Shown: positions 7,527 through 15,045, counted from the first letter of the stretch. The stretch: DNA of 64,000 bases from IMGVR_UViG_3300021964_000012:186001-250000; one strand, 5' to 3'. The notes: generated from the letters alone by a model not told the origin. Program-made: numbers and translations.

Positions 7527-8513
7527 TTAGAAAGAAGCGGCAATTTTAAATTGTAAAACTGAACCATCATCATCTGTTGATGCTTCTCCACCGTTCTTGT
7601 ACTCATAGTCTGTGTAGTTTACATAACCAGTTAAACCTGGTGCAATAGCATGTTTAAGTTCAACCATGTTTTGCTTTAAGTTTTCTTTTTCAGAACCTGA
7701 TACATCTAATGCATCTTCTGATTCCATTGTTGAAACTGCAACAGTTGTAGTGTCATTAATTGCATAACTTGCACCACCGCCTACTGTTTCAATGTCCTCG
7801 TCTGCACCTTCTACAGTACTCATTGCACCAATAAGTGTTACTGCACCAAATGATACTTTAGCACCAATGCTTTGTGACTCATTGTCAATTGCACCTGATA
7901 CTTCTTGCATGCCTTTTGTGTAACCAATTTTGATGTTTTCATGAGTGTAACTTGCACCATATGCAGTTGAATCAGTTGCGCCTGTTGCGCCTGAATCCAT
8001 GTAACTTACACCAGCTTGTATTCCGCCGAAACTTGGAGAAATGTATGATACTTTGTCAAGATCTGCACCATATGTTTTTTCACCTGCATTTGATTGAATT
8101 GAAGCATTGGTGTATGTGCCAGTTACTTCTTCGTCCATGATGTCTTGCTCACCAATACCAAAGTTGTCTGTAACTGCATCGTTACCGCCTAGTATTAGTT
8201 TACCAGCAGCACCTGAAATATAAATTGATGATTCGTCAATGGTTGCATTTGTGTCTGCAACTGTTGCCATTTCAACAACCATACCATAGTTTAGGCCACT
8301 ATCAGTTTTGTTTGAGAAAGTAAATTTAATTTCATTATCTGTGTTGCCCATTGAATCACCTTTTTGTGAAGCAATTTGTGAATCAACATCTTTATAATAA
8401 AATTCGGAACTACCAGAAATAGTAAATTCTGGCTTATTAACTGTGGCTTCTTGTGCCAAAGCAGTTGTACTCAGCAGTGTAGCTATCACTGCCAACGGGG
8501 CTAGTTTTTTCAT
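7527..8513 (-). CDS. Gram-negative porin (alphaproteobacterial type)
   Basis: Signal ending ALA; alternating beta strands; N-terminal FTISGSSEFYY; GLNYG; YISPSFGGIQAGVSY; C-terminal Phe (IAASF). Confidence 0.85.
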   Translation of the reverse strand: MKKLAPLAVIATLLSTTALAQEATVNKPEFTISGSSEFYYKDVDSQIASQKGDSMGNTDNEIKFTFSNKTDSGLNYGMVVEMATVADTNATIDESSIYISGAAGKLILGGNDAVTDNFGIGEQDIMDEEVTGTYTNASIQSNAGEKTYGADLDKVSYISPSFGGIQAGVSYMDSGATGATDSTAYGASYTHENIKIGYTKGMQEVSGAIDNESQSIGAKVSFGAVTLIGAMSTVEGADEDIETVGGGASYAINDTTTVAVSTMESEDALDVSGSEKENLKQNMVELKHAIAPGLTGYVNYTDYEYKNGGEASTDDDGSVLQFKIAASF

Positions 8514-9276: not shown

Positions 9277-10071
9277 ATGAAAATACACTTTGATTTAATT
9301 TCTGATCTACATGTAGATACTTGGGATGAAGAATTCACCTGGGAAGGAAAAGCCACCAGCCTGTATGCCGTTGTAGCCGGAGATATCAGCAGAGATAGAT
9401 CCAAGTTACGTCCAGTGCTTGAGGAGATCAGCAAGCACTATCTTATGACCATGTTTGTTGATGGAAACGATGAACATAGATGGACCATGGATAATTTAGC
9501 TGAAAGTTATAAAACACTAAAACAAGAATTAACTGGTATTCCTAATTTTATTTGGCTACAAGATGACTCTTTAGTGATAGATAATATAGGATTTATTGGG
9601 ACCAACGGTTGGACAAGTTTTGATTTTGCAGAGGACAATTCCTATCTTGAAAATAAAAAATGGATGGAACAGACATATAAAATAAGCATGTTTGCTGGAC
9701 AACAAATTGAAGCAATGGCAATGCAAGATGCAGGTTTCTTGGTCAAGACTGTTGAAAGGCTGCAAAGACATCCTGATGTAAAAAAGATTGTTGTGGTATC
9801 TCATTTTGTTCCTAATGTAAATCTAATCAACCATGACACACAATTAGTTAACCAACCAAGTAGACTTAACACAACTGGTAATAGTTTTTTACTGAGATGT
9901 CTTGAAGAAGATCATGAACATAAAATTGATACATGGTGTTTTGGACACTATCACAGTGACGTTGATAGAGTTTTAAACGGTGTAAGGTATGTGAATAATT
10001 GTCGTGGTCGAGGTGGGACTAACTGGTGCAAACCAGTTTATTATCCTAAACGTATTGAAATTGGTTTTTAA
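9277..10071 (+). CDS. Calcineurin-like metallophosphoesterase
   Basis: DLH (ISDLHVD), AGD, GNDEH, SH and FGHYH motifs. Start moved to MKIHF. Confidence 0.85.
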   Translation: MKIHFDLISDLHVDTWDEEFTWEGKATSLYAVVAGDISRDRSKLRPVLEEISKHYLMTMFVDGNDEHRWTMDNLAESYKTLKQELTGIPNFIWLQDDSLVIDNIGFIGTNGWTSFDFAEDNSYLENKKWMEQTYKISMFAGQQIEAMAMQDAGFLVKTVERLQRHPDVKKIVVVSHFVPNVNLINHDTQLVNQPSRLNTTGNSFLLRCLEEDHEHKIDTWCFGHYHSDVDRVLNGVRYVNNCRGRGGTNWCKPVYYPKRIEIGF

Positions 10072-10373
10072 AGATCAGGTTCTAGTTTAACCTGCAAAGG
10101 AAAACCTTTGCTTCTAGCACACACTGTCACTTCTACGCCTTTTTGTTCAGCCATTTCATAAGGAAGTACTGCAACCACTGCACTGCCTTTTTCATGAATG
10201 TCTACAGTAATTTTTTCAGCAGTTGTTGGTGTATAATGAAAAATGTCAACAAGTGTTTCGATAACAAATTCCATTGCAGTTTTATCGTCGTTGACATAGA
10301 TCAACTTGAATAAGTGTGGTTCAGCTAGGGTAGTGCTTATTTCGGTTTTAACACTGGAATCTGGACTTGTCAT
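10068..10373 (-). CDS. clpS: ATP-dependent Clp protease adaptor ClpS
   Basis: NDDKTAMEFVIETL, IHEKGSAVVAV, YEMAEQK and FPLQVKLEP. Confidence 0.92.
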   Translation of the reverse strand: MTSPDSSVKTEISTTLAEPHLFKLIYVNDDKTAMEFVIETLVDIFHYTPTTAEKITVDIHEKGSAVVAVLPYEMAEQKGVEVTVCARSKGFPLQVKLEPDL

Positions 10374-10391
10374 GTATTTTCCTATTGTTGC

Positions 10392-10417
10392 TTAGTAGAG
10401 GGGAGACCCTCTACTAA
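10392..10417 (-). terminator. Intrinsic terminator/hairpin after hsp20
   Basis: TTAGTAGAGGG-GAGA-CCCTCTACTAA, an 11-bp stem. Confidence 0.7.
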
Positions 10418-10430
10418 TACTTATCTTTGG

Positions 10431-10874
10431 TTATTTGATTTCAATAGTTTTTGGCTTGAGGGCATCTGGAATGATTTTTTCTAAATGGATACTTAATACT
10501 CCATTTTTCATTTCTGCACTTTTTACTTCCACATACTCTGCAAGATTAAAAGTTCTTGTAAAGTTACGTCCTGAAAGTCCTCTGTGTAGATATTCAATTC
10601 CGTTTGCTTCATCTTCACCGTCAATCTTCTTAGGTTGGTTACCTGTGATTGTCAGTGTGCCATTTTCCATTTCTATCGTCATGTCTGCTTTTTCAAAACC
10701 AGCGGCCGCAATTTCTATGGTATAATTGTAATCATTCTCTCTGATGATATTATATGGCGGATAGTTCTGTGAACTTGTCATTTCAAAATTTGATGTGATT
10801 CTATCAAATAAAGAATCAAATCCAACAGCGTTACGATAAAAAGGGGTTAAGTCGAGTGAGGTTATTCTTGTCAT
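10431..10874 (-). CDS. Small heat-shock protein (Hsp20/IbpA type)
   Basis: GFD, NYPPYNI, EIAAAGF, YLHRGLSGRNFTRTFNLAEYVEV and NGVLSI.LE. Confidence 0.95.
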   Translation of the reverse strand: MTRITSLDLTPFYRNAVGFDSLFDRITSNFEMTSSQNYPPYNIIRENDYNYTIEIAAAGFEKADMTIEMENGTLTITGNQPKKIDGEDEANGIEYLHRGLSGRNFTRTFNLAEYVEVKSAEMKNGVLSIHLEKIIPDALKPKTIEIK

Positions 10875-10932
10875 TTTTATTTCTCCTATTAAAGCAAGAT
10901 TAAAATGTAAGTCCTATTAAGCAACTTACAAT
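10875..10932 (-). ncRNA. ROSE-like RNA thermometer (two tandem UUGCU...AGGA hairpins)
   Basis: The SD hairpin is UCUUGCU-UUAAU-AGGAGA with a bulged G. The upstream hairpin UGUAAGU/ACUUACA encloses UGCUUAAUAGG. Confidence 0.75.
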
Positions 10933-10934
10933 AT

Positions 10935-10965
10935 TATTTATACACGGAATAAGGTATGCTGTCAA
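10935..10965 (-). promoter_or_regulatory. Composite sigma70 (TTGACA-17-TATAAA) and late (TATAAATA) promoter of hsp20
   Basis: -35 at 10960-10965 and -10 at 10937-10942, overlapping TATAAATA at 10935-10942. Confidence 0.75.
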
Positions 10966-10980
10966 TAAAAAAGGTAAAAA

Positions 10981-11019
10981 AAAGTTGCTAGGATAAAAAC
11001 AAAAATACCTAGCAACTTT
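10981..11019 (-). terminator. Intrinsic terminator after the FG-GAP gene
   Basis: 12-bp inverted repeat AAAGTTGCTAGG/CCTAGCAACTTT with a following U-tract on the minus strand. Confidence 0.75.
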
Positions 11020-11057
11020 ATAGTTAGAGGGATAGGAGTCCCTTTGTCAAATTTTGA

Positions 11058-13418
11058 TTAGAATGTCCAAGTATAATTGATACTTGCATTCTTATCACCG
11101 CTTTGACTTACGGCACCACCTACCTTAATCTTAGTATTAGTATCTAAGTTAAAGTTGTAGTTTGCTTTCAAGTAACCATTTATGTTTGTTGGTAACTTGA
11201 ATTTGTGTTCAGTGTAGTTAAGGTTGCCTGTTGAATCAACACTAGTAGGCACATTAGCAGTAACATCACCGTTTAGTAACACAGGATGTACACCAGCACC
11301 TAAGTCTAAGTTGCCTTGCTTGTATCCAAGCTCCCCCCATATACCAAATTGATCACTAACTTTTGTTATTAAACCTTTTTGGAAGTTTGTTTTAACATGC
11401 ATGGCACTTGCTCTTGCAGTAAAGCTACCTTTCTTGTATGTAACAACATTGTCAACAATGTTAGTGTTATCAACTTCACCCCATATGCCTGAGAAACCAA
11501 TCCATGGATTGCTATTCAACTTTGACAGATGCACACTGTAAGTTGTTCCATTGCCAGTTACTGCATTAGCATTGGTCCACATGTTTTGTCCTAGTGTGAA
11601 CTGTTGTGTTTTTGTATCGGCGCCAGCAATAACACCATTTTCAGTTGTAGTATTAAAACTAGAGATACTGTTGAACATTGTTGCACCATCAGAATCAATA
11701 TTTGTTTGTGCAAGGTTAACTGCATAGTTTCTTCCTATGCCGTCAAGTGCTTGACCAGTAACATCACCAATGTCAAATCCGTATACACTACCATTAAGTT
11801 TTAAACCGTTCATGGTAAGTGTGCCAATTGGTTGGAATGCTTTGTTGATATCAATTATTGTACCACCAGCAAATGATTGACCTGTATCAGTAAGTGCTTG
11901 AGCAGCTTGTGCATCACTTAGGTAACTCCAAGAATTTTGTATCATATTGATCGCAGTTCCTGCGGCTATTGTAGTTCCATCTAGCCTACTCATAAAAAAC
12001 GTAAGTTTATTATCATTACTGTCTCCGCCACCGGCACTGTTTGCCCATGTTACAAGATACTTGTAACCATCATCTGCTTGAAAAATGTTTACAGTACTAC
12101 CATTTATATCAGTCAAACCATTGGAAGTAGCAATTGATCTAACATCTGTCATAAAGTTAGTGAGTATGTTTTGATAAGCCGCAACGTATTTGTTATCAGA
12201 TGTTTTTAACAAAAACTGGTGACTGTTGTGTGGATTGTTCATAGTACTTGAATCACCACCACTGACCAATATGTCTGTTTTACCATCACCGTTAATATCA
12301 AAGAACCTTGGTTTATATGTACTTGAAGTATTGTTTTGATAACCAATTAGTGTAGAGCTTGTTGTATCAGTAAACACTCCACTACCGTTGTTTTGCATAA
12401 ACTGTATTTCGCTTAATTTGTCATCACCATTGTTTACTTTTTTGCTGAATACAATAACGTCTGCATATCCATCTTCATTAAAGTCGTGGTTGGCAATTTC
12501 AACACTATGATCTATACCGCTGGTACTAAATGCTGGAAGGTCTCTTTCATGTGTAAATTTAAGTACACCGCCTGTCCAGTCAACACTGTACATTTTAGTT
12601 GTGTTACTATCACTGCAAGTGCCGCTTACTACTGCACACTGAGCATCAGTAAGTATTACCTCATTGTTGTTACCGTTGTTCATAAAATTGCCTATTGCAA
12701 CTGCTGAACCACCGTATCTGAGATCACCTGTATTGCCTAATGCATCAACGTGTGTGGTAAATCCATTCACTTGGTTGTTGAGTGCAATAGTTGTATTTTT
12801 ATTTTTTAGATCCGGCATGATAATATCAATATAACCATCATTGTTCAAGTCACCAACATCACTACCATGTGACCAAACGTCTAAGGTTGGAATACTAACT
12901 TTGGTAAAGTTTGATCCATTATTAGTAAAGAAGGTAGCAGGACCAAAGTGTCTCATATCAGTACTGTGCGAAACAAACATATCTTTTCTGCCAGTTTTAA
13001 AGAAGTCAGCAAAATGAACATTAGGCTCTGTGCCCATTATTTCATTGTCGGTACCTGAAAACCACTGTGCAGTCTTATCAACCAATGAACCATTTTCAAA
13101 AGACAGCATGCTTAGTTTAGTGTTGCTCCATGTACCAGCTGTAGCAGGTTGTGTCTTCCTACCAGCAACTATAAAATCATCTGCATAACCATCACCATCA
13201 ATATCTTCTACAAATGTGTCACCAACGAACCATGCATTATCGTTACCACCTGCCATTGGATCAACTGTTACTTGTTGAACTGGCGGGGTATAATATAAGA
13301 CTGGACTTGGAGGATTTGGTGTGTAACCACCTCCGCCACCACCACCACCTCCGCCACAAGCGGAAAGAGCAGTTGCACCTAGTAGTGCGGCCACTATTCG
13401 AGTGTTTTGTTTTATCAT
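11058..13418 (-). CDS. Lipoprotein with FG-GAP/VCBS beta-propeller and C-terminal autotransporter-like beta-barrel
   Basis: Lipobox LSA-C, then Gly10. About six DxxxDGxxD repeats (DIDGDGYADD, DLNNDGYID, DFNEDGYAD, DINGDGKTD). Amphipathic C-terminal strands ending NYTWTF. Confidence 0.75.
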   Translation of the reverse strand: MIKQNTRIVAALLGATALSACGGGGGGGGGGYTPNPPSPVLYYTPPVQQVTVDPMAGGNDNAWFVGDTFVEDIDGDGYADDFIVAGRKTQPATAGTWSNTKLSMLSFENGSLVDKTAQWFSGTDNEIMGTEPNVHFADFFKTGRKDMFVSHSTDMRHFGPATFFTNNGSNFTKVSIPTLDVWSHGSDVGDLNNDGYIDIIMPDLKNKNTTIALNNQVNGFTTHVDALGNTGDLRYGGSAVAIGNFMNNGNNNEVILTDAQCAVVSGTCSDSNTTKMYSVDWTGGVLKFTHERDLPAFSTSGIDHSVEIANHDFNEDGYADVIVFSKKVNNGDDKLSEIQFMQNNGSGVFTDTTSSTLIGYQNNTSSTYKPRFFDINGDGKTDILVSGGDSSTMNNPHNSHQFLLKTSDNKYVAAYQNILTNFMTDVRSIATSNGLTDINGSTVNIFQADDGYKYLVTWANSAGGGDSNDNKLTFFMSRLDGTTIAAGTAINMIQNSWSYLSDAQAAQALTDTGQSFAGGTIIDINKAFQPIGTLTMNGLKLNGSVYGFDIGDVTGQALDGIGRNYAVNLAQTNIDSDGATMFNSISSFNTTTENGVIAGADTKTQQFTLGQNMWTNANAVTGNGTTYSVHLSKLNSNPWIGFSGIWGEVDNTNIVDNVVTYKKGSFTARASAMHVKTNFQKGLITKVSDQFGIWGELGYKQGNLDLGAGVHPVLLNGDVTANVPTSVDSTGNLNYTEHKFKLPTNINGYLKANYNFNLDTNTKIKVGGAVSQSGDKNASINYTWTF

Positions 13419-13588: not shown

Positions 13589-13834
13589 ATGACAAACATA
13601 ATCGAAACTAAATTTGGTACCTTGGTTAATACAAAAAAGGTAGCCGCAGGAAGTGCATCTAGTATAAAAAAATCTGGTGCGTTTTATAGTTTTTCAATAA
13701 AAATAGCAAATGATGATATAAGAGAATACTCATTTACGGATCTTGCAAGAGCTCAGTATATGAGAACAATTATGATTGGTCATTTAGAAGAAAAAATTAA
13801 AAACGAAACTAAGAGTATTTCTAAAACTGCCTAG
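13589..13834 (+). CDS. Hypothetical 81-aa protein under glutamine-riboswitch control
   Basis: RBS GGGAGAG; directly follows the riboswitch; TAAATA promoter at 13508-13513. Confidence 0.7.
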   Translation: MTNIIETKFGTLVNTKKVAAGSASSIKKSGAFYSFSIKIANDDIREYSFTDLARAQYMRTIMIGHLEEKIKNETKSISKTA

Positions 13835-15045
13835 GCTGCTAATTTTAGTGGTTTCTTAACGAGGCCTGGAGTTATAACTACTTCGGTAATATCCTGTTTA
13901 GCATATTCTTTTAGGCTAAACATATGCGGCATCAATATACGTTCAAGCTCGGCTTGCAAACTTCTTGCTCCAGTTTTACGTGTTGCCGCATTTTTTGCGA
14001 TTTCAAGCAGTGCTTCATCGCTAAATTTTAATTTTACACCATCACATTCAAACAGATAGGTATATTGATCAATTAAACTGTTTTTAATTCCAGTAAGCAC
14101 ATATACCAACTGTTTTTCTGAAAGTTCTTTCAAACCTACCCATGTTGGAAAACGTCCTACAAATTCGGGAATCATACCAAACTTTACCAAATCATCTGGC
14201 TCCATATTATCAAGTTCACCTTCTGCATTTGTTTTAACATCAACACCAAAACCTATTCCAGAACCTTCAGCACGTCTTTTGATAACATCATTAATACCAA
14301 CAAAGGCGCCACCAGCAATAAAAAGTATATTTGTTGTATCAATATCTATCATTTCAGCCTGTGGATTTTTCCGACTAGCATTTTGTGCAGGAACTCTACA
14401 AACAGTTCCTTCTACCACTTTCAACAATGCTTGTTGAACGCCTTCTCCACTTACATCACGTGTAATGCTTGTGTTTTCACTTTTGCGAGCGATTTTATCA
14501 ATCTCGTCTAAAAATATTATACCTCTTTGGCATTTTTCAACATTACCACCAGCATTGCTTAATAATTTTCCAATCAGTGACTCAACATCATCACCTACAT
14601 AACCAGCTTCAGTAATACTTGTTGCATCAGTGACTGCAAACGGCACATCTAGATACCTTGCTACTGACTTTGCTAATAGTGTTTTACCACAACCAGTTGG
14701 ACCAAGGAGCAGAACGTTTGCTTTATCTAGTTCTAGATCTTTTGATTTGTTTTGTATTCTTTTGTAATGGTTTGCCACTGCAACACTTAGAACTGTTTTA
14801 GCGGATTCTTGTCCTATTACATATTTGTCTAAAAATGCTTTTAATTCGGTTGGATCAATGTCTTTGAATTTTACTGAATCAACTGTTTCTTTTGTAAGAG
14901 ATTTTAGTAAGTCGCCACATAGGTCTACACATTCGTTACAAATAGCAACTCTATCACCTACAATAAGTTTATTAACTTTATCTTTTTCTTTATTGCAAAA
15001 ATCACATCGATTGTATTGTTGTTTTTGTTCTTCGTCCATGGTCAT
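13831..15045 (-). CDS. clpX: ATP-dependent Clp protease ATPase subunit ClpX
   Basis: C4 zinc domain (CDFC...ICNECVDLC), Walker A GPTGCGKT, FLDEIDKI, RDVSGEGVQQALLK, IGF loop and GARSL. Confidence 0.95.
   Translation of the reverse strand: MTMDEEQKQQYNRCDFCNKEKDKVNKLIVGDRVAICNECVDLCGDLLKSLTKETVDSVKFKDIDPTELKAFLDKYVIGQESAKTVLSVAVANHYKRIQNKSKDLELDKANVLLLGPTGCGKTLLAKSVARYLDVPFAVTDATSITEAGYVGDDVESLIGKLLSNAGGNVEKCQRGIIFLDEIDKIARKSENTSITRDVSGEGVQQALLKVVEGTVCRVPAQNASRKNPQAEMIDIDTTNILFIAGGAFVGINDVIKRRAEGSGIGFGVDVKTNAEGELDNMEPDDLVKFGMIPEFVGRFPTWVGLKELSEKQLVYVLTGIKNSLIDQYTYLFECDGVKLKFSDEALLEIAKNAATRKTGARSLQAELERILMPHMFSLKEYAKQDITEVVITPGLVKKPLKLAA

What the first reader, a model, noticed from the sequence alone, without database searches (positions are those of the whole stretch)
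10875..10965. Tandem ROSE-like RNA thermometer on a phage hsp20
Seen: the ~58-nt 5'-UTR defined by the promoter consists of two hairpins with the same UUGCU(U)UAAUAGGA core. The second pairs UCUUGCU with the SD AGGAGA through a bulged G. Known: this is the ROSE signature of alpha- and gammaproteobacterial sHsp mRNAs. The promoter is sigma70/late, not obviously sigma32-type, so heat control would be translational. The duplicated core in the first hairpin is unusual.
Basis: partly seen in the sequence, partly recalled or inferred. Interest (0 to 1): 0.6.

Follow-up and report, generated by a model that had tools for sequence, protein, structure and literature searches.

The report
ROSE-type leader on phage hsp20
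The untranslated leader of a small heat-shock gene in a 328-kb T4-like marine phage is a diverged copy of the bacterial ROSE RNA thermometer, and the same leader sits on hsp20 (and sometimes dnaK) in well over a hundred other marine phage sequences, including cultured cyanophages and pelagiphages, which I found reported nowhere in the papers searched.

Summary
On the minus strand a near-consensus promoter (TTGACA, 17 nt, TATAAATA) precedes a ~56-nt leader. It has hairpin 1 (10930-10906), hairpin 2 (10899-10882, UCUUGCU against AGGAGA with a bulged G) and the ATG of an IbpA-like hsp20.

The ROSE reading is supported by comparison, not by folding energy. All 52 distinct leaders of the first 80 related viral loci, and those of 4 cultured phages, keep YUYGCU, a 4-9 nt loop and AGGAG. 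Hairpin 1 covaries strongly. Several relatives match Rfam ROSE_3 over its full length at 25-40 bits (threshold 43). The window's own leader matches no Rfam ROSE model.

"Tandem thermometer" is not supported. Hairpin 1 is the ordinary ROSE hairpin I, which always has a bulged G above a C-G/Y-R helix. In this clade one C-G pair became U-A, so it looks like hairpin 2.

Most likely mechanism: a stable 5' hairpin plus a weak helix that masks the ribosome-binding site and opens with heat, under a phage promoter rather than sigma-32. Feedback by the small heat-shock protein itself is a live rival, because the phage protein keeps the residue matching E. coli IbpA Arg93. Temperature response is untested. 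It is a new member of a known kind, in an unreported and widespread viral setting.

The parts
10971..11019 (-). Terminator of the upstream FG-GAP lipoprotein gene: a perfect 12-bp stem (arms 11019-11008 and 10992-10981), a 15-nt loop and a U-run. It marks the hsp20 leader as the start of its own transcription unit.
   Evidence: inverted repeat I3, 100% complementary. RNA-library contigs leave 10982-11030 uncovered.
10960..10965 (-). -35 hexamer TTGACA, 17 nt upstream of the -10 box.
   Evidence: The same TTGACA-N17-TATAAA arrangement occurs in relatives L012, L015-L026 and L032. Function is inferred.
10935..10942 (-). TATAAATA box. It serves as a -10 element (TATAAA) and is identical to the T4-type late-promoter core. 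The inferred transcription start is about 10930.
   Evidence: 13 copies in the genome against about 60 expected, and most lie 25-90 nt upstream of a start codon; 34 of 54 ATAAATA sites have the ATG of a long ORF 10-120 nt downstream. T4 Gp23-type capsid gene. The box sits 3-5 nt before hairpin 1 in most relatives.
10906..10930 (-). Hairpin 1, the equivalent of ROSE hairpin I. It has an 8-bp lower stem, bulged G10922, two apical pairs (C-G, U-A) and loop UAAU. It is predicted to be stable and to lie at the very 5' end of the mRNA.
   Evidence: in the minimum-energy fold at 4-45 C. Covariation: 94.7% of cells paired against 60.7% in shuffles, 0 of 500 shuffles as high. RNAalifold predicts the same structure. 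Same architecture as hairpin I of the Rfam ROSE and ROSE_3 consensus.
10900..10905 (-). A/U-rich linker. Together with the last two bases of hairpin 1, it could form an A-U lower stem with 10880-10872, which includes the AUG.
   Evidence: inverted repeat I6, 8 of 9 complementary; z-score only -0.6, so this is not significant in this clade. In the relatives L018-L031, L036 and L040 the linker is clearly complementary to the AUG region (z -2 to -4).
10882..10899 (-). Hairpin 2, the candidate thermosensor. Anti-SD UCUUGCU (10899-10893, bulged G10895), loop UUAAU (10892-10888), ribosome-binding site AGGAG (10887-10883) and A10882.
   Evidence: The core is invariant in 119 distinct hsp20 leaders, so it offers no covariation. 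The flanking pair covaries: 64.7% paired against 46.3% in shuffles, 0 of 2000 shuffles as high. Same design as the E. coli K-12 ibpA leader, CUCGCU-N6-AGGAG.
10431..10874 (-). hsp20, encoding a 147-aa IbpA-like small heat-shock protein. The ATG is at 10874-10872.
   Evidence: Pfam HSP20, 58.6 bits. PHROG 432. NCBIfam IbpA model, 119 bits, below its cut-off of 212. Residues matching E. coli IbpA Y34, R93 and R97 are kept as Y38, R103 and R107; K98 is T108.
10392..10417 (-). An 11-bp G+C-rich hairpin between hsp20 and clpS, with no U-run on the minus strand. It is a possible 3' end or stabiliser of the hsp20 mRNA.
   Evidence: RNA-library contigs of hsp20 and clpS break here, but palindromes also break assemblies.

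Best explanation
The leader is a two-hairpin ROSE-type element that controls translation. It is homologous to the short ROSE leaders of proteobacterial ibpA genes (Rfam ROSE_3 type) and is carried by a T4-like jumbo phage in front of its own IbpA-like hsp20.

1. Transcription starts at about 10930, from a phage promoter that combines TTGACA-N17-TATAAA with the T4-late core TATAAATA. Unlike bacterial ibpA, it is not under sigma-32. (Inferred.)
2. Hairpin 1 is a stable 5'-terminal stem-loop. It is the ROSE hairpin I, and acts as a folding scaffold and/or mRNA stabiliser, not as a second sensor. (The structure is shown by covariation. The role is inferred from the Pseudomonas work.)
3. Hairpin 2 pairs UCUUGCU with AGGAGA through a U.G pair and a bulged G. 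This masks the ribosome-binding site when cold and opens as temperature rises, so phage Hsp20 is translated under heat or proteotoxic stress. (The motif and its conservation are shown. Melting and its translational effect are inferred.)
4. The helix is much weaker than in bacterial relatives: median minimum free energy at 37 C is -3.3 against -8.3 kcal/mol. That would fit a lower set-point for an estuarine or marine host.
For: Conservation and uniqueness:
- The anti-SD/SD/ATG pattern occurs once in the 328-kb genome.
- All 52 distinct leaders of the first 80 viral hsp20 loci (39-95% protein identity) keep YUYGCU, a 4-9 nt loop and AGGAG, while the linker, loop and spacer vary.
- With further loci this rises to 119 distinct hairpin-2 strings.
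53 of the 81 matches examined precede an Hsp20 ORF.
- Cultured phages Syn33, P-TIM40, HTVC008M and Melnitz-3 carry the same leader.

Structure:
- Hairpin 1 covaries: 7 of 9 pairs change on both sides, covariation score 0.92 against 0.26 in shuffles, and at most 46% pairing when the partner columns are slid. RNAalifold agrees.
- The pair flanking hairpin 2 covaries: U:A 53, C:G 15, A:U 9.

Homology to ROSE:
- ROSE_3 matches the whole model in L080 (39.9 bits), L018 (35.7, E 1.8e-6), L014 (35.0), L120/Melnitz (34.1), L032 (34.0) and L022 (24.7).
- The apical part of hairpin 1 in many phage leaders is nearly identical to the ROSE_3 consensus.
- Bacterial homologues L083 and L088 score 70-73 bits on Rfam ROSE.
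- Two-hairpin ROSE leaders have been shown to work this way in Pseudomonas ibpA (PMC3669281). There hairpin II alone confers thermoregulation and hairpin I stays closed.
- The E. coli ibpA leader has the same core, CUCGCU-N6-AGGAG.

Other support:
- The same leader precedes a different chaperone gene, dnaK, in three viral loci. That argues for a functional cassette rather than a passenger.
- The hairpin 1 type is not a generic feature of this genome.
- RNA-library contigs of 95-97% identical relatives cover hsp20 in four metatranscriptomes.
Against: - The window's leader matches no Rfam ROSE model, even in a 91-nt scan at E<=10 or a ROSE_3 search of the whole genome.
- Relatives stay below the ROSE_3 gathering score.
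- The core pairs of hairpin 2 never vary, so covariation cannot prove that helix.
- Nearest-neighbour folding is unsupportive. The z-score is -0.92. The full-leader fold prefers anti-SD pairing with codons 2-3. The exact ROSE pairs have probability 0.08 or less for the window, and exceed 0.5 in only about 17% of 129 leaders.
- Scrambling the anti-SD hexamer predicts more masking of the ribosome-binding site, not less.
- The same method also fails on the E. coli ibpA leader (0.16-0.49) and on an Rfam-positive ROSE (0). It is therefore weak evidence either way.
- No temperature experiment exists.
- RNA contigs reach upstream of the inferred start, to 10944 and 10981. The transcription start is therefore not confirmed.
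Confidence: 0.6

Rival explanations
1. The leader is mainly an operator for feedback by the small heat-shock protein. Oligomers of the phage Hsp20, or of host IbpA, bind the leader and repress translation. When aggregated proteins titrate the chaperone, repression lifts. On this view the leader senses protein aggregation rather than temperature. This could also act together with a thermometer.
For: - E. coli, Cedecea and Vibrio IbpA repress their own translation by binding the ibpA 5' UTR. This needs Arg93, an aromatic residue at position 34 and positive charge at 97/98 (PMC10474464).
- The window's Hsp20 keeps R103 (=R93), Y38 (=Y34) and R107 (=R97). The Arg93 column is at least 90% conserved across the phage homologues aligned and is Gln in IbpB.
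- The apical loop of hairpin 1 (GAUGGUC) is conserved in sequence in 7 of the 41 distinct forms of hairpin 1, on differing stems, and resembles the ROSE_3 consensus. That suggests recognition beyond mere pairing.
- The predicted helix is so weak that a protein partner would help explain repression.
Against: - The residue matching K98 is Thr in the window and uncharged in most phage homologues, and K98A abolished repression in E. coli.
- The RNA determinants of IbpA binding are not defined in the papers read.
- The window clade has lost the conserved GAUGGUC loop and has UAAU instead.
- The dnaK genes with the same leader are not small heat-shock genes, although a trans-acting sHsp could still bind them.
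- No binding test was possible.
Confidence: 0.25
2. The leader is an inherited relic that no longer regulates. Hairpin 1 simply stabilises the mRNA 5' end. The anti-SD motif is kept by descent or to damp translation mildly and constitutively. Hsp20 is made whenever the promoter fires.
For: - Hairpin 2 is very weak: -1.1 kcal/mol alone at 37 C.
- The ribosome-binding site is predicted to be more than 55% open at 20 C and above.
- No ROSE model matches the window.
- The sigma-32 promoter has been replaced.
- Most phage leaders lack the G-C pairs that flank the motif in Pseudomonas (PMC3669281).
Against: - The hexamer and the following U are invariant in 119 distinct leaders, across proteins down to about 30% identity, while neighbouring bases drift. 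That is hard to explain without selection.
- The flanking pair covaries.
- The leader has been placed on dnaK as well.
- The validated E. coli ibpA hairpin is predicted to be just as weak by the same method.
Confidence: 0.13
3. This is a true tandem sensor. In the window's clade hairpin 1 acts as a second thermometer or a decoy. Its UUGCU could swap partners with the real ribosome-binding site, and its AGGA could serve as a stand-by site.
For: - The two cores are 13/14-nt near-repeats.
- The variant is kept in L002-L006, L012, L015-L017 and L129.
Against: - No start codon follows hairpin 1 at a usable distance.
- Hairpin 1 is predicted to be stable up to 45 C.
- In most relatives its apical part is GCC...GG, with no resemblance to a ribosome-binding site.
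- The difference is a single compensatory C-G to U-A change.
- In Pseudomonas, hairpin I does not melt (PMC3669281).
Confidence: 0.05

Closest known systems
Short two-hairpin ROSE-like RNA thermometers of Pseudomonas ibpA (Krajewski et al. 2013, PMC3669281), probably what Rfam RF02523 ROSE_3 models (its source was not checked)
   Same: - A leader of about 60 nt with two hairpins.
- Hairpin I lies at the 5' end, with a bulged G above a short G/C helix.
- Hairpin II pairs U(U/C)GCU imperfectly with the ribosome-binding site, and the AUG lies just behind it.
- The downstream gene is ibpA-type.
- Relatives of the window's leader align to the whole ROSE_3 model.
   Different: - It is carried by a virus.
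- The promoter is sigma-70/T4-late type instead of sigma-32.
- The terminal loop of hairpin II is longer (4-9 nt) and A/U-rich, and most phage leaders lack flanking G-C pairs.
- Predicted stability is much lower.
- The window's hairpin 1 has U-A instead of C-G at the loop-closing pair.
- The window itself scores below every reporting threshold.
E. coli ibpA leader (ROSE-like, three hairpins)
   Same: The sensing core is nearly identical, CUCGCU-N6-AGGAG. The protein is the best NCBIfam match. Arg93 is conserved.
   Different: E. coli has three hairpins and sigma-32 control. It also has IbpA autoregulation demonstrated (PMC10474464), which is untested here.
Canonical ROSE of alpha-proteobacteria (Rfam RF00435)
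   Same: The bulged-G hairpin I architecture and the UYGCU/SD register are the same. In some phage clades the AUG is also paired by the linker.
   Different: The canonical element is about 94 nt, G+C-rich and built from several hairpins (three in the Rfam consensus shown). It gives no hit on any phage leader.
RNA thermometers already described in phages (lambda cIII, SPbeta blyA fourU, a sigma-70 candidate; listed in PMC11182007)
   Same: They are temperature-sensing leaders encoded by phages.
   Different: They have unrelated motifs and control unrelated genes. None is ROSE-type and none controls a chaperone. That paper counts only two established cases plus one candidate.

Membership tests
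ROSE-like RNA thermometer (functional class) | U(U/C)GCU motif imperfectly paired with the ribosome-binding site in the 3'-proximal hairpin | tested here: met
   UCUUGCU (10899-10893) lies opposite AGGAGA (10887-10882). This pairing is the fold of the isolated hairpin at 15-30 C. The motif is kept in all 119 distinct hsp20 leaders.
ROSE-like RNA thermometer (functional class) | Bulged G within the anti-SD strand, next to a U.G pair | tested here: met
   G10895 is bulged and U10896 pairs with G10885 in the predicted pairing. This rests on prediction only. No probing was done.
ROSE-like RNA thermometer (functional class) | Two to four hairpins in the 5' UTR of a small heat-shock gene, with the ribosome-binding site in the last one | tested here: met
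   Two hairpins lie upstream of an IbpA-like hsp20. Hairpin 1 is supported by covariation.
ROSE-like RNA thermometer (functional class) | Temperature-dependent melting of the SD hairpin and temperature-dependent translation | not testable with these tools
   Only nearest-neighbour models were available. They are ambiguous and also fail on the validated E. coli ibpA leader.
ROSE-like RNA thermometer (functional class) | Sigma-32 promoter upstream (typical of bacterial members, not strictly defining) | tested here: not met
   The promoter is TTGACA-N17-TATAAATA, with no CTTGAA...CCCCAT motif. Bacterial homologues do have CTTGAA boxes.
Rfam RF02523 ROSE_3 | Covariance-model score of at least 43 bits (gathering score) | tested here: not met
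   The window gives no hit at E<=10 in 91 nt or in the whole genome. Relatives score 24.7-39.9 bits over the full model, all below threshold.
Rfam RF00435 ROSE / RF01832 ROSE_2 | Covariance-model match | tested here: not met
   No hit appears in the window or in any phage leader. The positive controls L083 and L088 score 70-73 bits on ROSE.
Phage hsp20 leader family (defined here) | Late or sigma-70 box, then a bulged-G hairpin, linker, YUYGCU, A/U loop, AGGAG and ATG of hsp20 | tested here: met
   The window shares every element with L002 (95% protein identity) through L014 (55%) and beyond. L014 in turn hits ROSE_3 at 35 bits.
fourU thermometer | Four consecutive U residues paired with the ribosome-binding site | tested here: not met
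   The strand opposite the ribosome-binding site is UCUUGCU, not UUUU.
Rfam RF02980 freshwater-2 RNA | Covariance-model score of at least 49.9 bits | tested here: not met
   The window scores 14.8 bits and L014 30.2. The match is mostly to the unstructured tail around the ribosome-binding site.
IbpA self-repression leader (PMC10474464) | The cognate small heat-shock protein carries Arg93, an aromatic residue at 34, and basic residues at 97 and 98 | tested here: inconclusive
   R103, Y38 and R107 are present, but the position matching K98 is Thr. RNA binding could not be tested.

The most novel reading that the evidence does not exclude
T4-like marine and estuarine phages, from 140-kb pelagiphages and cyanophages to 300-kb jumbo phages, carry their own post-transcriptional heat-shock module. 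A ROSE-type leader, tuned to low temperatures, is fitted to phage promoters and placed on phage hsp20 and, in some phages, on dnaK. The virus would then sense temperature or protein aggregation in the infected cell independently of host sigma-32. This would be the first widespread class of RNA thermometers in viruses. It may be coupled to feedback by the phage small heat-shock protein through the residue matching Arg93.
Probability: 0.45. Interest if true: 0.75.

Novelty: new member of a known kind. Interest (0 to 1): 0.58.

Why it matters
- RNA thermometers in phages are counted on one hand: lambda cIII, SPbeta blyA and one candidate (PMC11182007). I found no paper linking ROSE elements to phage hsp20. 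hsp20 is annotated in 508 cultured-phage records that match this protein.
- If the leader works as in bacteria, translation of phage chaperones in the sea would be set by temperature or proteotoxic stress, not by the infection programme alone.
- The well over a hundred natural variants, with differing loop lengths, U or C at the wobble position, and with or without pairing of the AUG, would form a ready-made series of low-temperature ROSE switches for biophysics and synthetic biology.
- The result also shows that Rfam's ROSE models miss this A/U-rich branch.

Tried and rejected
- **Rfam scans of the window** (701 nt and 91 nt) and a ROSE_3 search of the whole genome found no ROSE hit, only spurious miRNA and lncRNA matches.
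- **MAFFT alignments of whole leaders** (A1, A2, A3) put loops and the ribosome-binding site out of register. RNAalifold on A1 predicted no pairs. I used anchor-based parsing in scripts and ungapped sub-alignments instead (A4, A5).
- **No covariance model was built**, for the same reason. So there was no model-based search of bacterial genomes for the donor or host.
- **Linker-to-AUG lower stem:** real in some clades (z -2 to -4) but not significant in the window's clade.
- **Hairpin 1 as a generic 5' element of this phage's mRNAs:** rejected. The genome has 6 such hairpins against 5-13 in random sequence, and only the hsp20 one is strong.
- **Energy-based ranking of SD masking:** hsp20 ranks 7th of 53, which is not decisive. 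The probability of the exact ROSE pairs is low. The method fails on known thermometers too, so I did not use it as evidence against.
- **RNA-library contigs** show presence of hsp20 RNA or DNA in metatranscriptomes but cannot fix the transcription start. Ends fall at 10899, 10944 and 10981.
- **The freshwater-2 motif:** neither the main text of the source paper nor any held supplement mentions it, and sequence matches are sub-threshold.
- **Megablast of the locus against cultured phages:** no match.
- **Chance:** rejected on the conservation data.

Full report
**1. What is there**

The window is part of a 328,292-bp virus record with direct terminal repeats. The record encodes a T4 Gp23-type major capsid protein (332 bits). 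The finding lies on the minus strand, upstream of a 147-aa ORF at 10874-10431.

- The ORF is an Hsp20/alpha-crystallin protein: Pfam 58.6 bits and PHROG 432.
- Its best NCBIfam model is IbpA, at 119 bits, below the equivalog cut-off of 212.
- No ORF of 40 aa or more overlaps 10875-11057 on either strand.

Reading the minus strand from upstream to downstream:

- The upstream FG-GAP lipoprotein gene ends at 11058.
- A perfect 12-bp terminator stem with a U-run follows, at 11019-10971.
- TTGACA lies at 10965-10960, then 17 nt, then TATAAATA at 10942-10935.
- Hairpin 1 is at 10930-10906, followed by a 6-nt A/U linker.
- Hairpin 2 is at 10899-10882 and holds the ribosome-binding site AGGAG.
- The ATG is at 10874.

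With a start about 6-7 nt after the box, the leader is about 56 nt and begins at the foot of hairpin 1. The consensus scanner did not report this promoter, because it requires T at the last position of the -10 hexamer.

**2. Is the observation right?**

Yes. Both hairpins and the repeated core exist exactly as described.

- Hairpin 1 is predicted at every temperature from 4 to 45 C.
- Hairpin 2 folded alone adopts the proposed pairing, with G10895 bulged, at 15-30 C. It is weak: -3.9 kcal/mol at 15 C and -1.1 at 37 C, where another register is preferred.

In the full leader the minimum-energy fold instead pairs UCUUG with CAAGA of codons 2-3, and the z-score against shuffles is only -0.92. Folding energy alone therefore does not lift the feature above chance.

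**3. Comparative evidence**

A protein-guided scan of IMG/VR found 204 related stretches, of which the best 80 loci were kept.

- They yield 52 distinct leaders, from proteins 39-95% identical to the window's. All 52 have YUYGCU, a loop of 4-9 nt, AGGAG and ATG.
- 46 of the 52 also have an upstream hairpin built as stem, bulged G, C-G, Y-R, loop.
- With further loci the count rises to 119 distinct hairpin-2 strings. The anti-SD is CUUGCU in 105, CUCGCU in 11, and UUUGCU or UUCGCU in 3. The next base is U in 118 of 119.
- In the window's own genome the combined pattern occurs once.
- Hairpins of the hairpin-1 type are no more frequent in the genome than in random sequence.
Of the 81 matches examined, 53 precede an Hsp20 ORF.

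Four cultured phages of the Kyanoviridae carry the same leader: Syn33, P-TIM40, Pelagibacter phage HTVC008M and Methylophilales phage Melnitz-3.

**4. Structure tests**

Hairpin 1 was tested on an ungapped alignment of 19 distinct sequences (A4).

| Measure | Observed | Shuffled |
|---|---|---|
| Cells forming a standard pair | 94.7% | 60.7% (0 of 500 as high) |
| Cells changed on both sides | 61 | 21 |
| Covariation score | 0.92 | 0.26 |

- When the partner columns are slid, pairing falls to 46% or less.
- Seven of the 9 pairs change on both sides.
- RNAalifold predicts the same structure on its own.

The bulged G and the C-G above it never vary. The loop-closing pair is C-G in 15 rows and U-A in 4. 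The window belongs to the U-A group, and that is the whole of the "duplicated core".

For hairpin 2 the six core positions are invariant or change on one side only (U.G to C-G). Covariation therefore cannot speak for or against the helix (A5).

The pair just outside the core does covary: U:A 53, C:G 15, A:U 9. That is 64.7% paired against 46.3 +/- 2.6% when partners are shuffled, with none of 2000 shuffles as high. The leaders are related to one another, so this is support rather than proof.

**5. Relation to known ROSE elements**

- Rfam finds nothing ROSE-like in the window, whether in 701 nt, in 91 nt or in a whole-genome ROSE_3 search.
- Relatives' leaders match ROSE_3 (RF02523, 69 positions, two hairpins) from end to end. 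Scores are L080 39.9 bits, L018 35.7 (E 1.8e-6 in a 96-nt scan), L014 35.0, Melnitz 34.1, L032 34.0 and L022 24.7. The gathering score is 43.
- The apical part of hairpin I in the ROSE_3 consensus is almost the same string as in many phage leaders.
- L014 (55% protein identity) links these to the window through L012 and L015, which share the window's hairpin-1 variant.
- Bacterial homologues of the protein reach at most 50% identity and come from gamma- and alpha-proteobacteria. They have UYGCU...GGAG leaders behind sigma-32-type CTTGAA boxes. Two of them score 70-73 bits on Rfam ROSE, whose hairpin I also shows the bulged-G design.
- The E. coli K-12 ibpA leader has CUCGCU-N6-AGGAG.

The closest described system is the two-hairpin ROSE-like thermometer of Pseudomonas ibpA. 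There hairpin II melts and alone confers regulation, while hairpin I stays folded and is thought to aid folding or mRNA stability (PMC3669281).

**6. Mechanism**

Shown:
- the sequence elements;
- the structure of hairpin 1;
- the conservation of the anti-SD/SD pair, and its register, which is identical to that of canonical ROSE;
- homology to ROSE_3-type leaders;
- the absence of a sigma-32 promoter.

Inferred:
- transcription from the TTGACA/TATAAATA promoter;
- the transcription start at about 10930;
- masking of the ribosome-binding site by hairpin 2 in the cold and its opening on warming;
- a stabilising role for hairpin 1.

TATAAATA looks like a real promoter element in this phage. It occurs 13 times against about 60 expected, mostly 25-90 nt before start codons. 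Of 54 ATAAATA sites, 34 have the ATG of a long ORF 10-120 nt downstream.

Predicted opening of the ribosome-binding site in the full leader rises from 0.30 at 4 C to 0.61-0.65 at 25-37 C. Phage hairpins are much weaker than those of bacterial relatives: median minimum free energy -3.3 against -8.3 kcal/mol. That would suit a low set-point.

These models are unreliable here. The exact ROSE pairs get 0.08 or less for the window. The same calculation also gives only 0.16-0.49 for the E. coli ibpA thermometer and 0 for an Rfam-positive ROSE.

**7. Rivals**

The strongest rival, or partner, is feedback by the small heat-shock protein itself.

- IbpA of E. coli, Cedecea and Vibrio binds its own 5' UTR and represses translation. 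Arg93 is irreplaceable for this (PMC10474464).
- The phage protein keeps the equivalents of Arg93, Tyr34 and Arg97 (R103, Y38, R107), but has Thr in place of Lys98.

A non-regulatory relic is made unlikely by the invariance of the motif across very divergent phages, and by its presence on dnaK in other phages. A true tandem sensor is unlikely for the reasons given in section 4.

**8. Expression**

The stretch occurs in estuary and marine metagenomes from many studies. In four metatranscriptomes from salt marsh and seawater, contigs 95-97% identical to the window cover hsp20:

- 10383-10981
- 10467-10944
- 10427-10899
- 10430-10776

Separate contigs cover clpS and the 3' end of the upstream gene. 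Nothing covers 10982-11030. Contigs cannot show starts or strand, and RNA libraries can contain DNA. This shows presence only and does not fix the transcription start.

**9. Novelty and verdict**

In the papers searched, ROSE elements are described in bacteria only. Phage RNA thermometers are listed as lambda cIII, SPbeta blyA and one candidate (PMC11182007). No paper connects phage hsp20 with a thermometer.

The element is a new member of a known kind: ROSE-type, closest to ROSE_3. The notable points are its viral carriage, its phage promoter, its A/U-rich weak sensing helix, its wide spread in T4-like marine phages and its occasional use on dnaK. Function as a thermometer remains a prediction.

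**10.

- Read laying was given 1001 letters.
- No alternative genetic code was used.
- The two large protein searches were not needed.

Noticed in passing
L154:750-2679 (+), L130:3-942 (-), L162:3-1168 (-); hsp20 at L154:2746-3165: The same two-hairpin ROSE-type leader (TAAATA box, bulged-G hairpin, CTTGCTT...AGGAG) precedes a phage-encoded DnaK/Hsp70 in three viral contigs (PF00012, 853 bits in L154). In L154, dnaK is followed by hsp20 with a second copy of the leader. In the papers I read, ROSE leaders are described on small heat-shock genes and ABC-transporter genes only.
   Followed up: partly
window 10068-10373 (-), 10431-10874 (-), 13831-15045 (-): hsp20 sits in a small proteostasis cluster. 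A ClpS-like adaptor (Pfam 82.9 bits) lies directly downstream. A full ClpX (NCBIfam 531 bits, above its cut-off) lies two genes upstream. The genome has no Hsp70. I did not look for ClpP.
   Followed up: partly
window 7527-8513 (-) and 11058-13418 (-): The phage encodes a Gram-negative porin (Porin_4, 113.8 bits). It also encodes a 786-aa lipoprotein-like FG-GAP repeat protein with a run of 10 glycines after the signal cysteine. Both are unusual cargo for a phage and point to a Gram-negative host.
   Followed up: no
whole genome G000; window 10935-10942, 4465, 6437, 24384, 32106, 40178, 46324, 54047: TATAAATA is about 4.6-fold under-represented (13 copies against about 60 expected). It lies mostly 25-90 nt upstream of start codons. 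34 of 54 ATAAATA sites have the ATG of a long ORF 10-120 nt downstream. This is probably the T4-type late-promoter set of this phage. The gp23 gene has no such box in the about 90 nt before its start.
   Followed up: partly
L014:1426-1503, L012:1430-1503, L015:1427-1503; window 10872-10901: Rfam freshwater-2 RNA (RF02980, a cis-regulatory motif of unknown function) gives sub-threshold matches to these leaders: 30.2, 27.3, 23.2 and 14.8 bits against a threshold of 49.9. The matches fall mainly on the A-rich tail around the ribosome-binding site. freshwater-2 might be a related phage leader, but I could not find its description.
   Followed up: partly
L045, L053, L061 (leaders just upstream of position 1501 in each locus): In one clade of phage hsp20 leaders the bulge position reads A instead of G (CUUACU...AGGAG). 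The single hairpin 1 is replaced by two different hairpins. This is a natural variant that could test the role of the bulged G.
   Followed up: no
L054-L058, L065: These hsp20 homologues lack the leader altogether. They follow another ORF closely, in G+C-richer contigs. The leader is therefore not universal.
   Followed up: no
window 10392-10417: An 11-bp G+C-rich palindromic hairpin lies between hsp20 and clpS, with no U-run on the coding strand. RNA-library contigs break here. It could be a processing or stabilising element, or simply an assembly break.
   Followed up: no
window 10920-10927 and 11011-11018 (also 10982-10989, inverted): The 8-mer AGCAACTT (GUUGCU-containing on the minus strand) of hairpin 1 recurs in both arms of the upstream terminator stem. 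GUUGCU/CUUGCU therefore occurs three times within 140 nt. This is roughly what chance allows (my estimate is 0.2-0.4), and I did not pursue it.
   Followed up: no
window 10851-10887 (records 4, 8, 11, 14): The deepest RNA-library contigs (depth up to 79) share only these 37 nt, from the ribosome-binding site to codon 8, with the window. Beyond that they continue into another variant of the leader, with anti-SD plus loop ATTATA as in L007-L010. A more distant relative's hsp20 appears to be the more abundant one in those salt-marsh and seawater samples.
   Followed up: no
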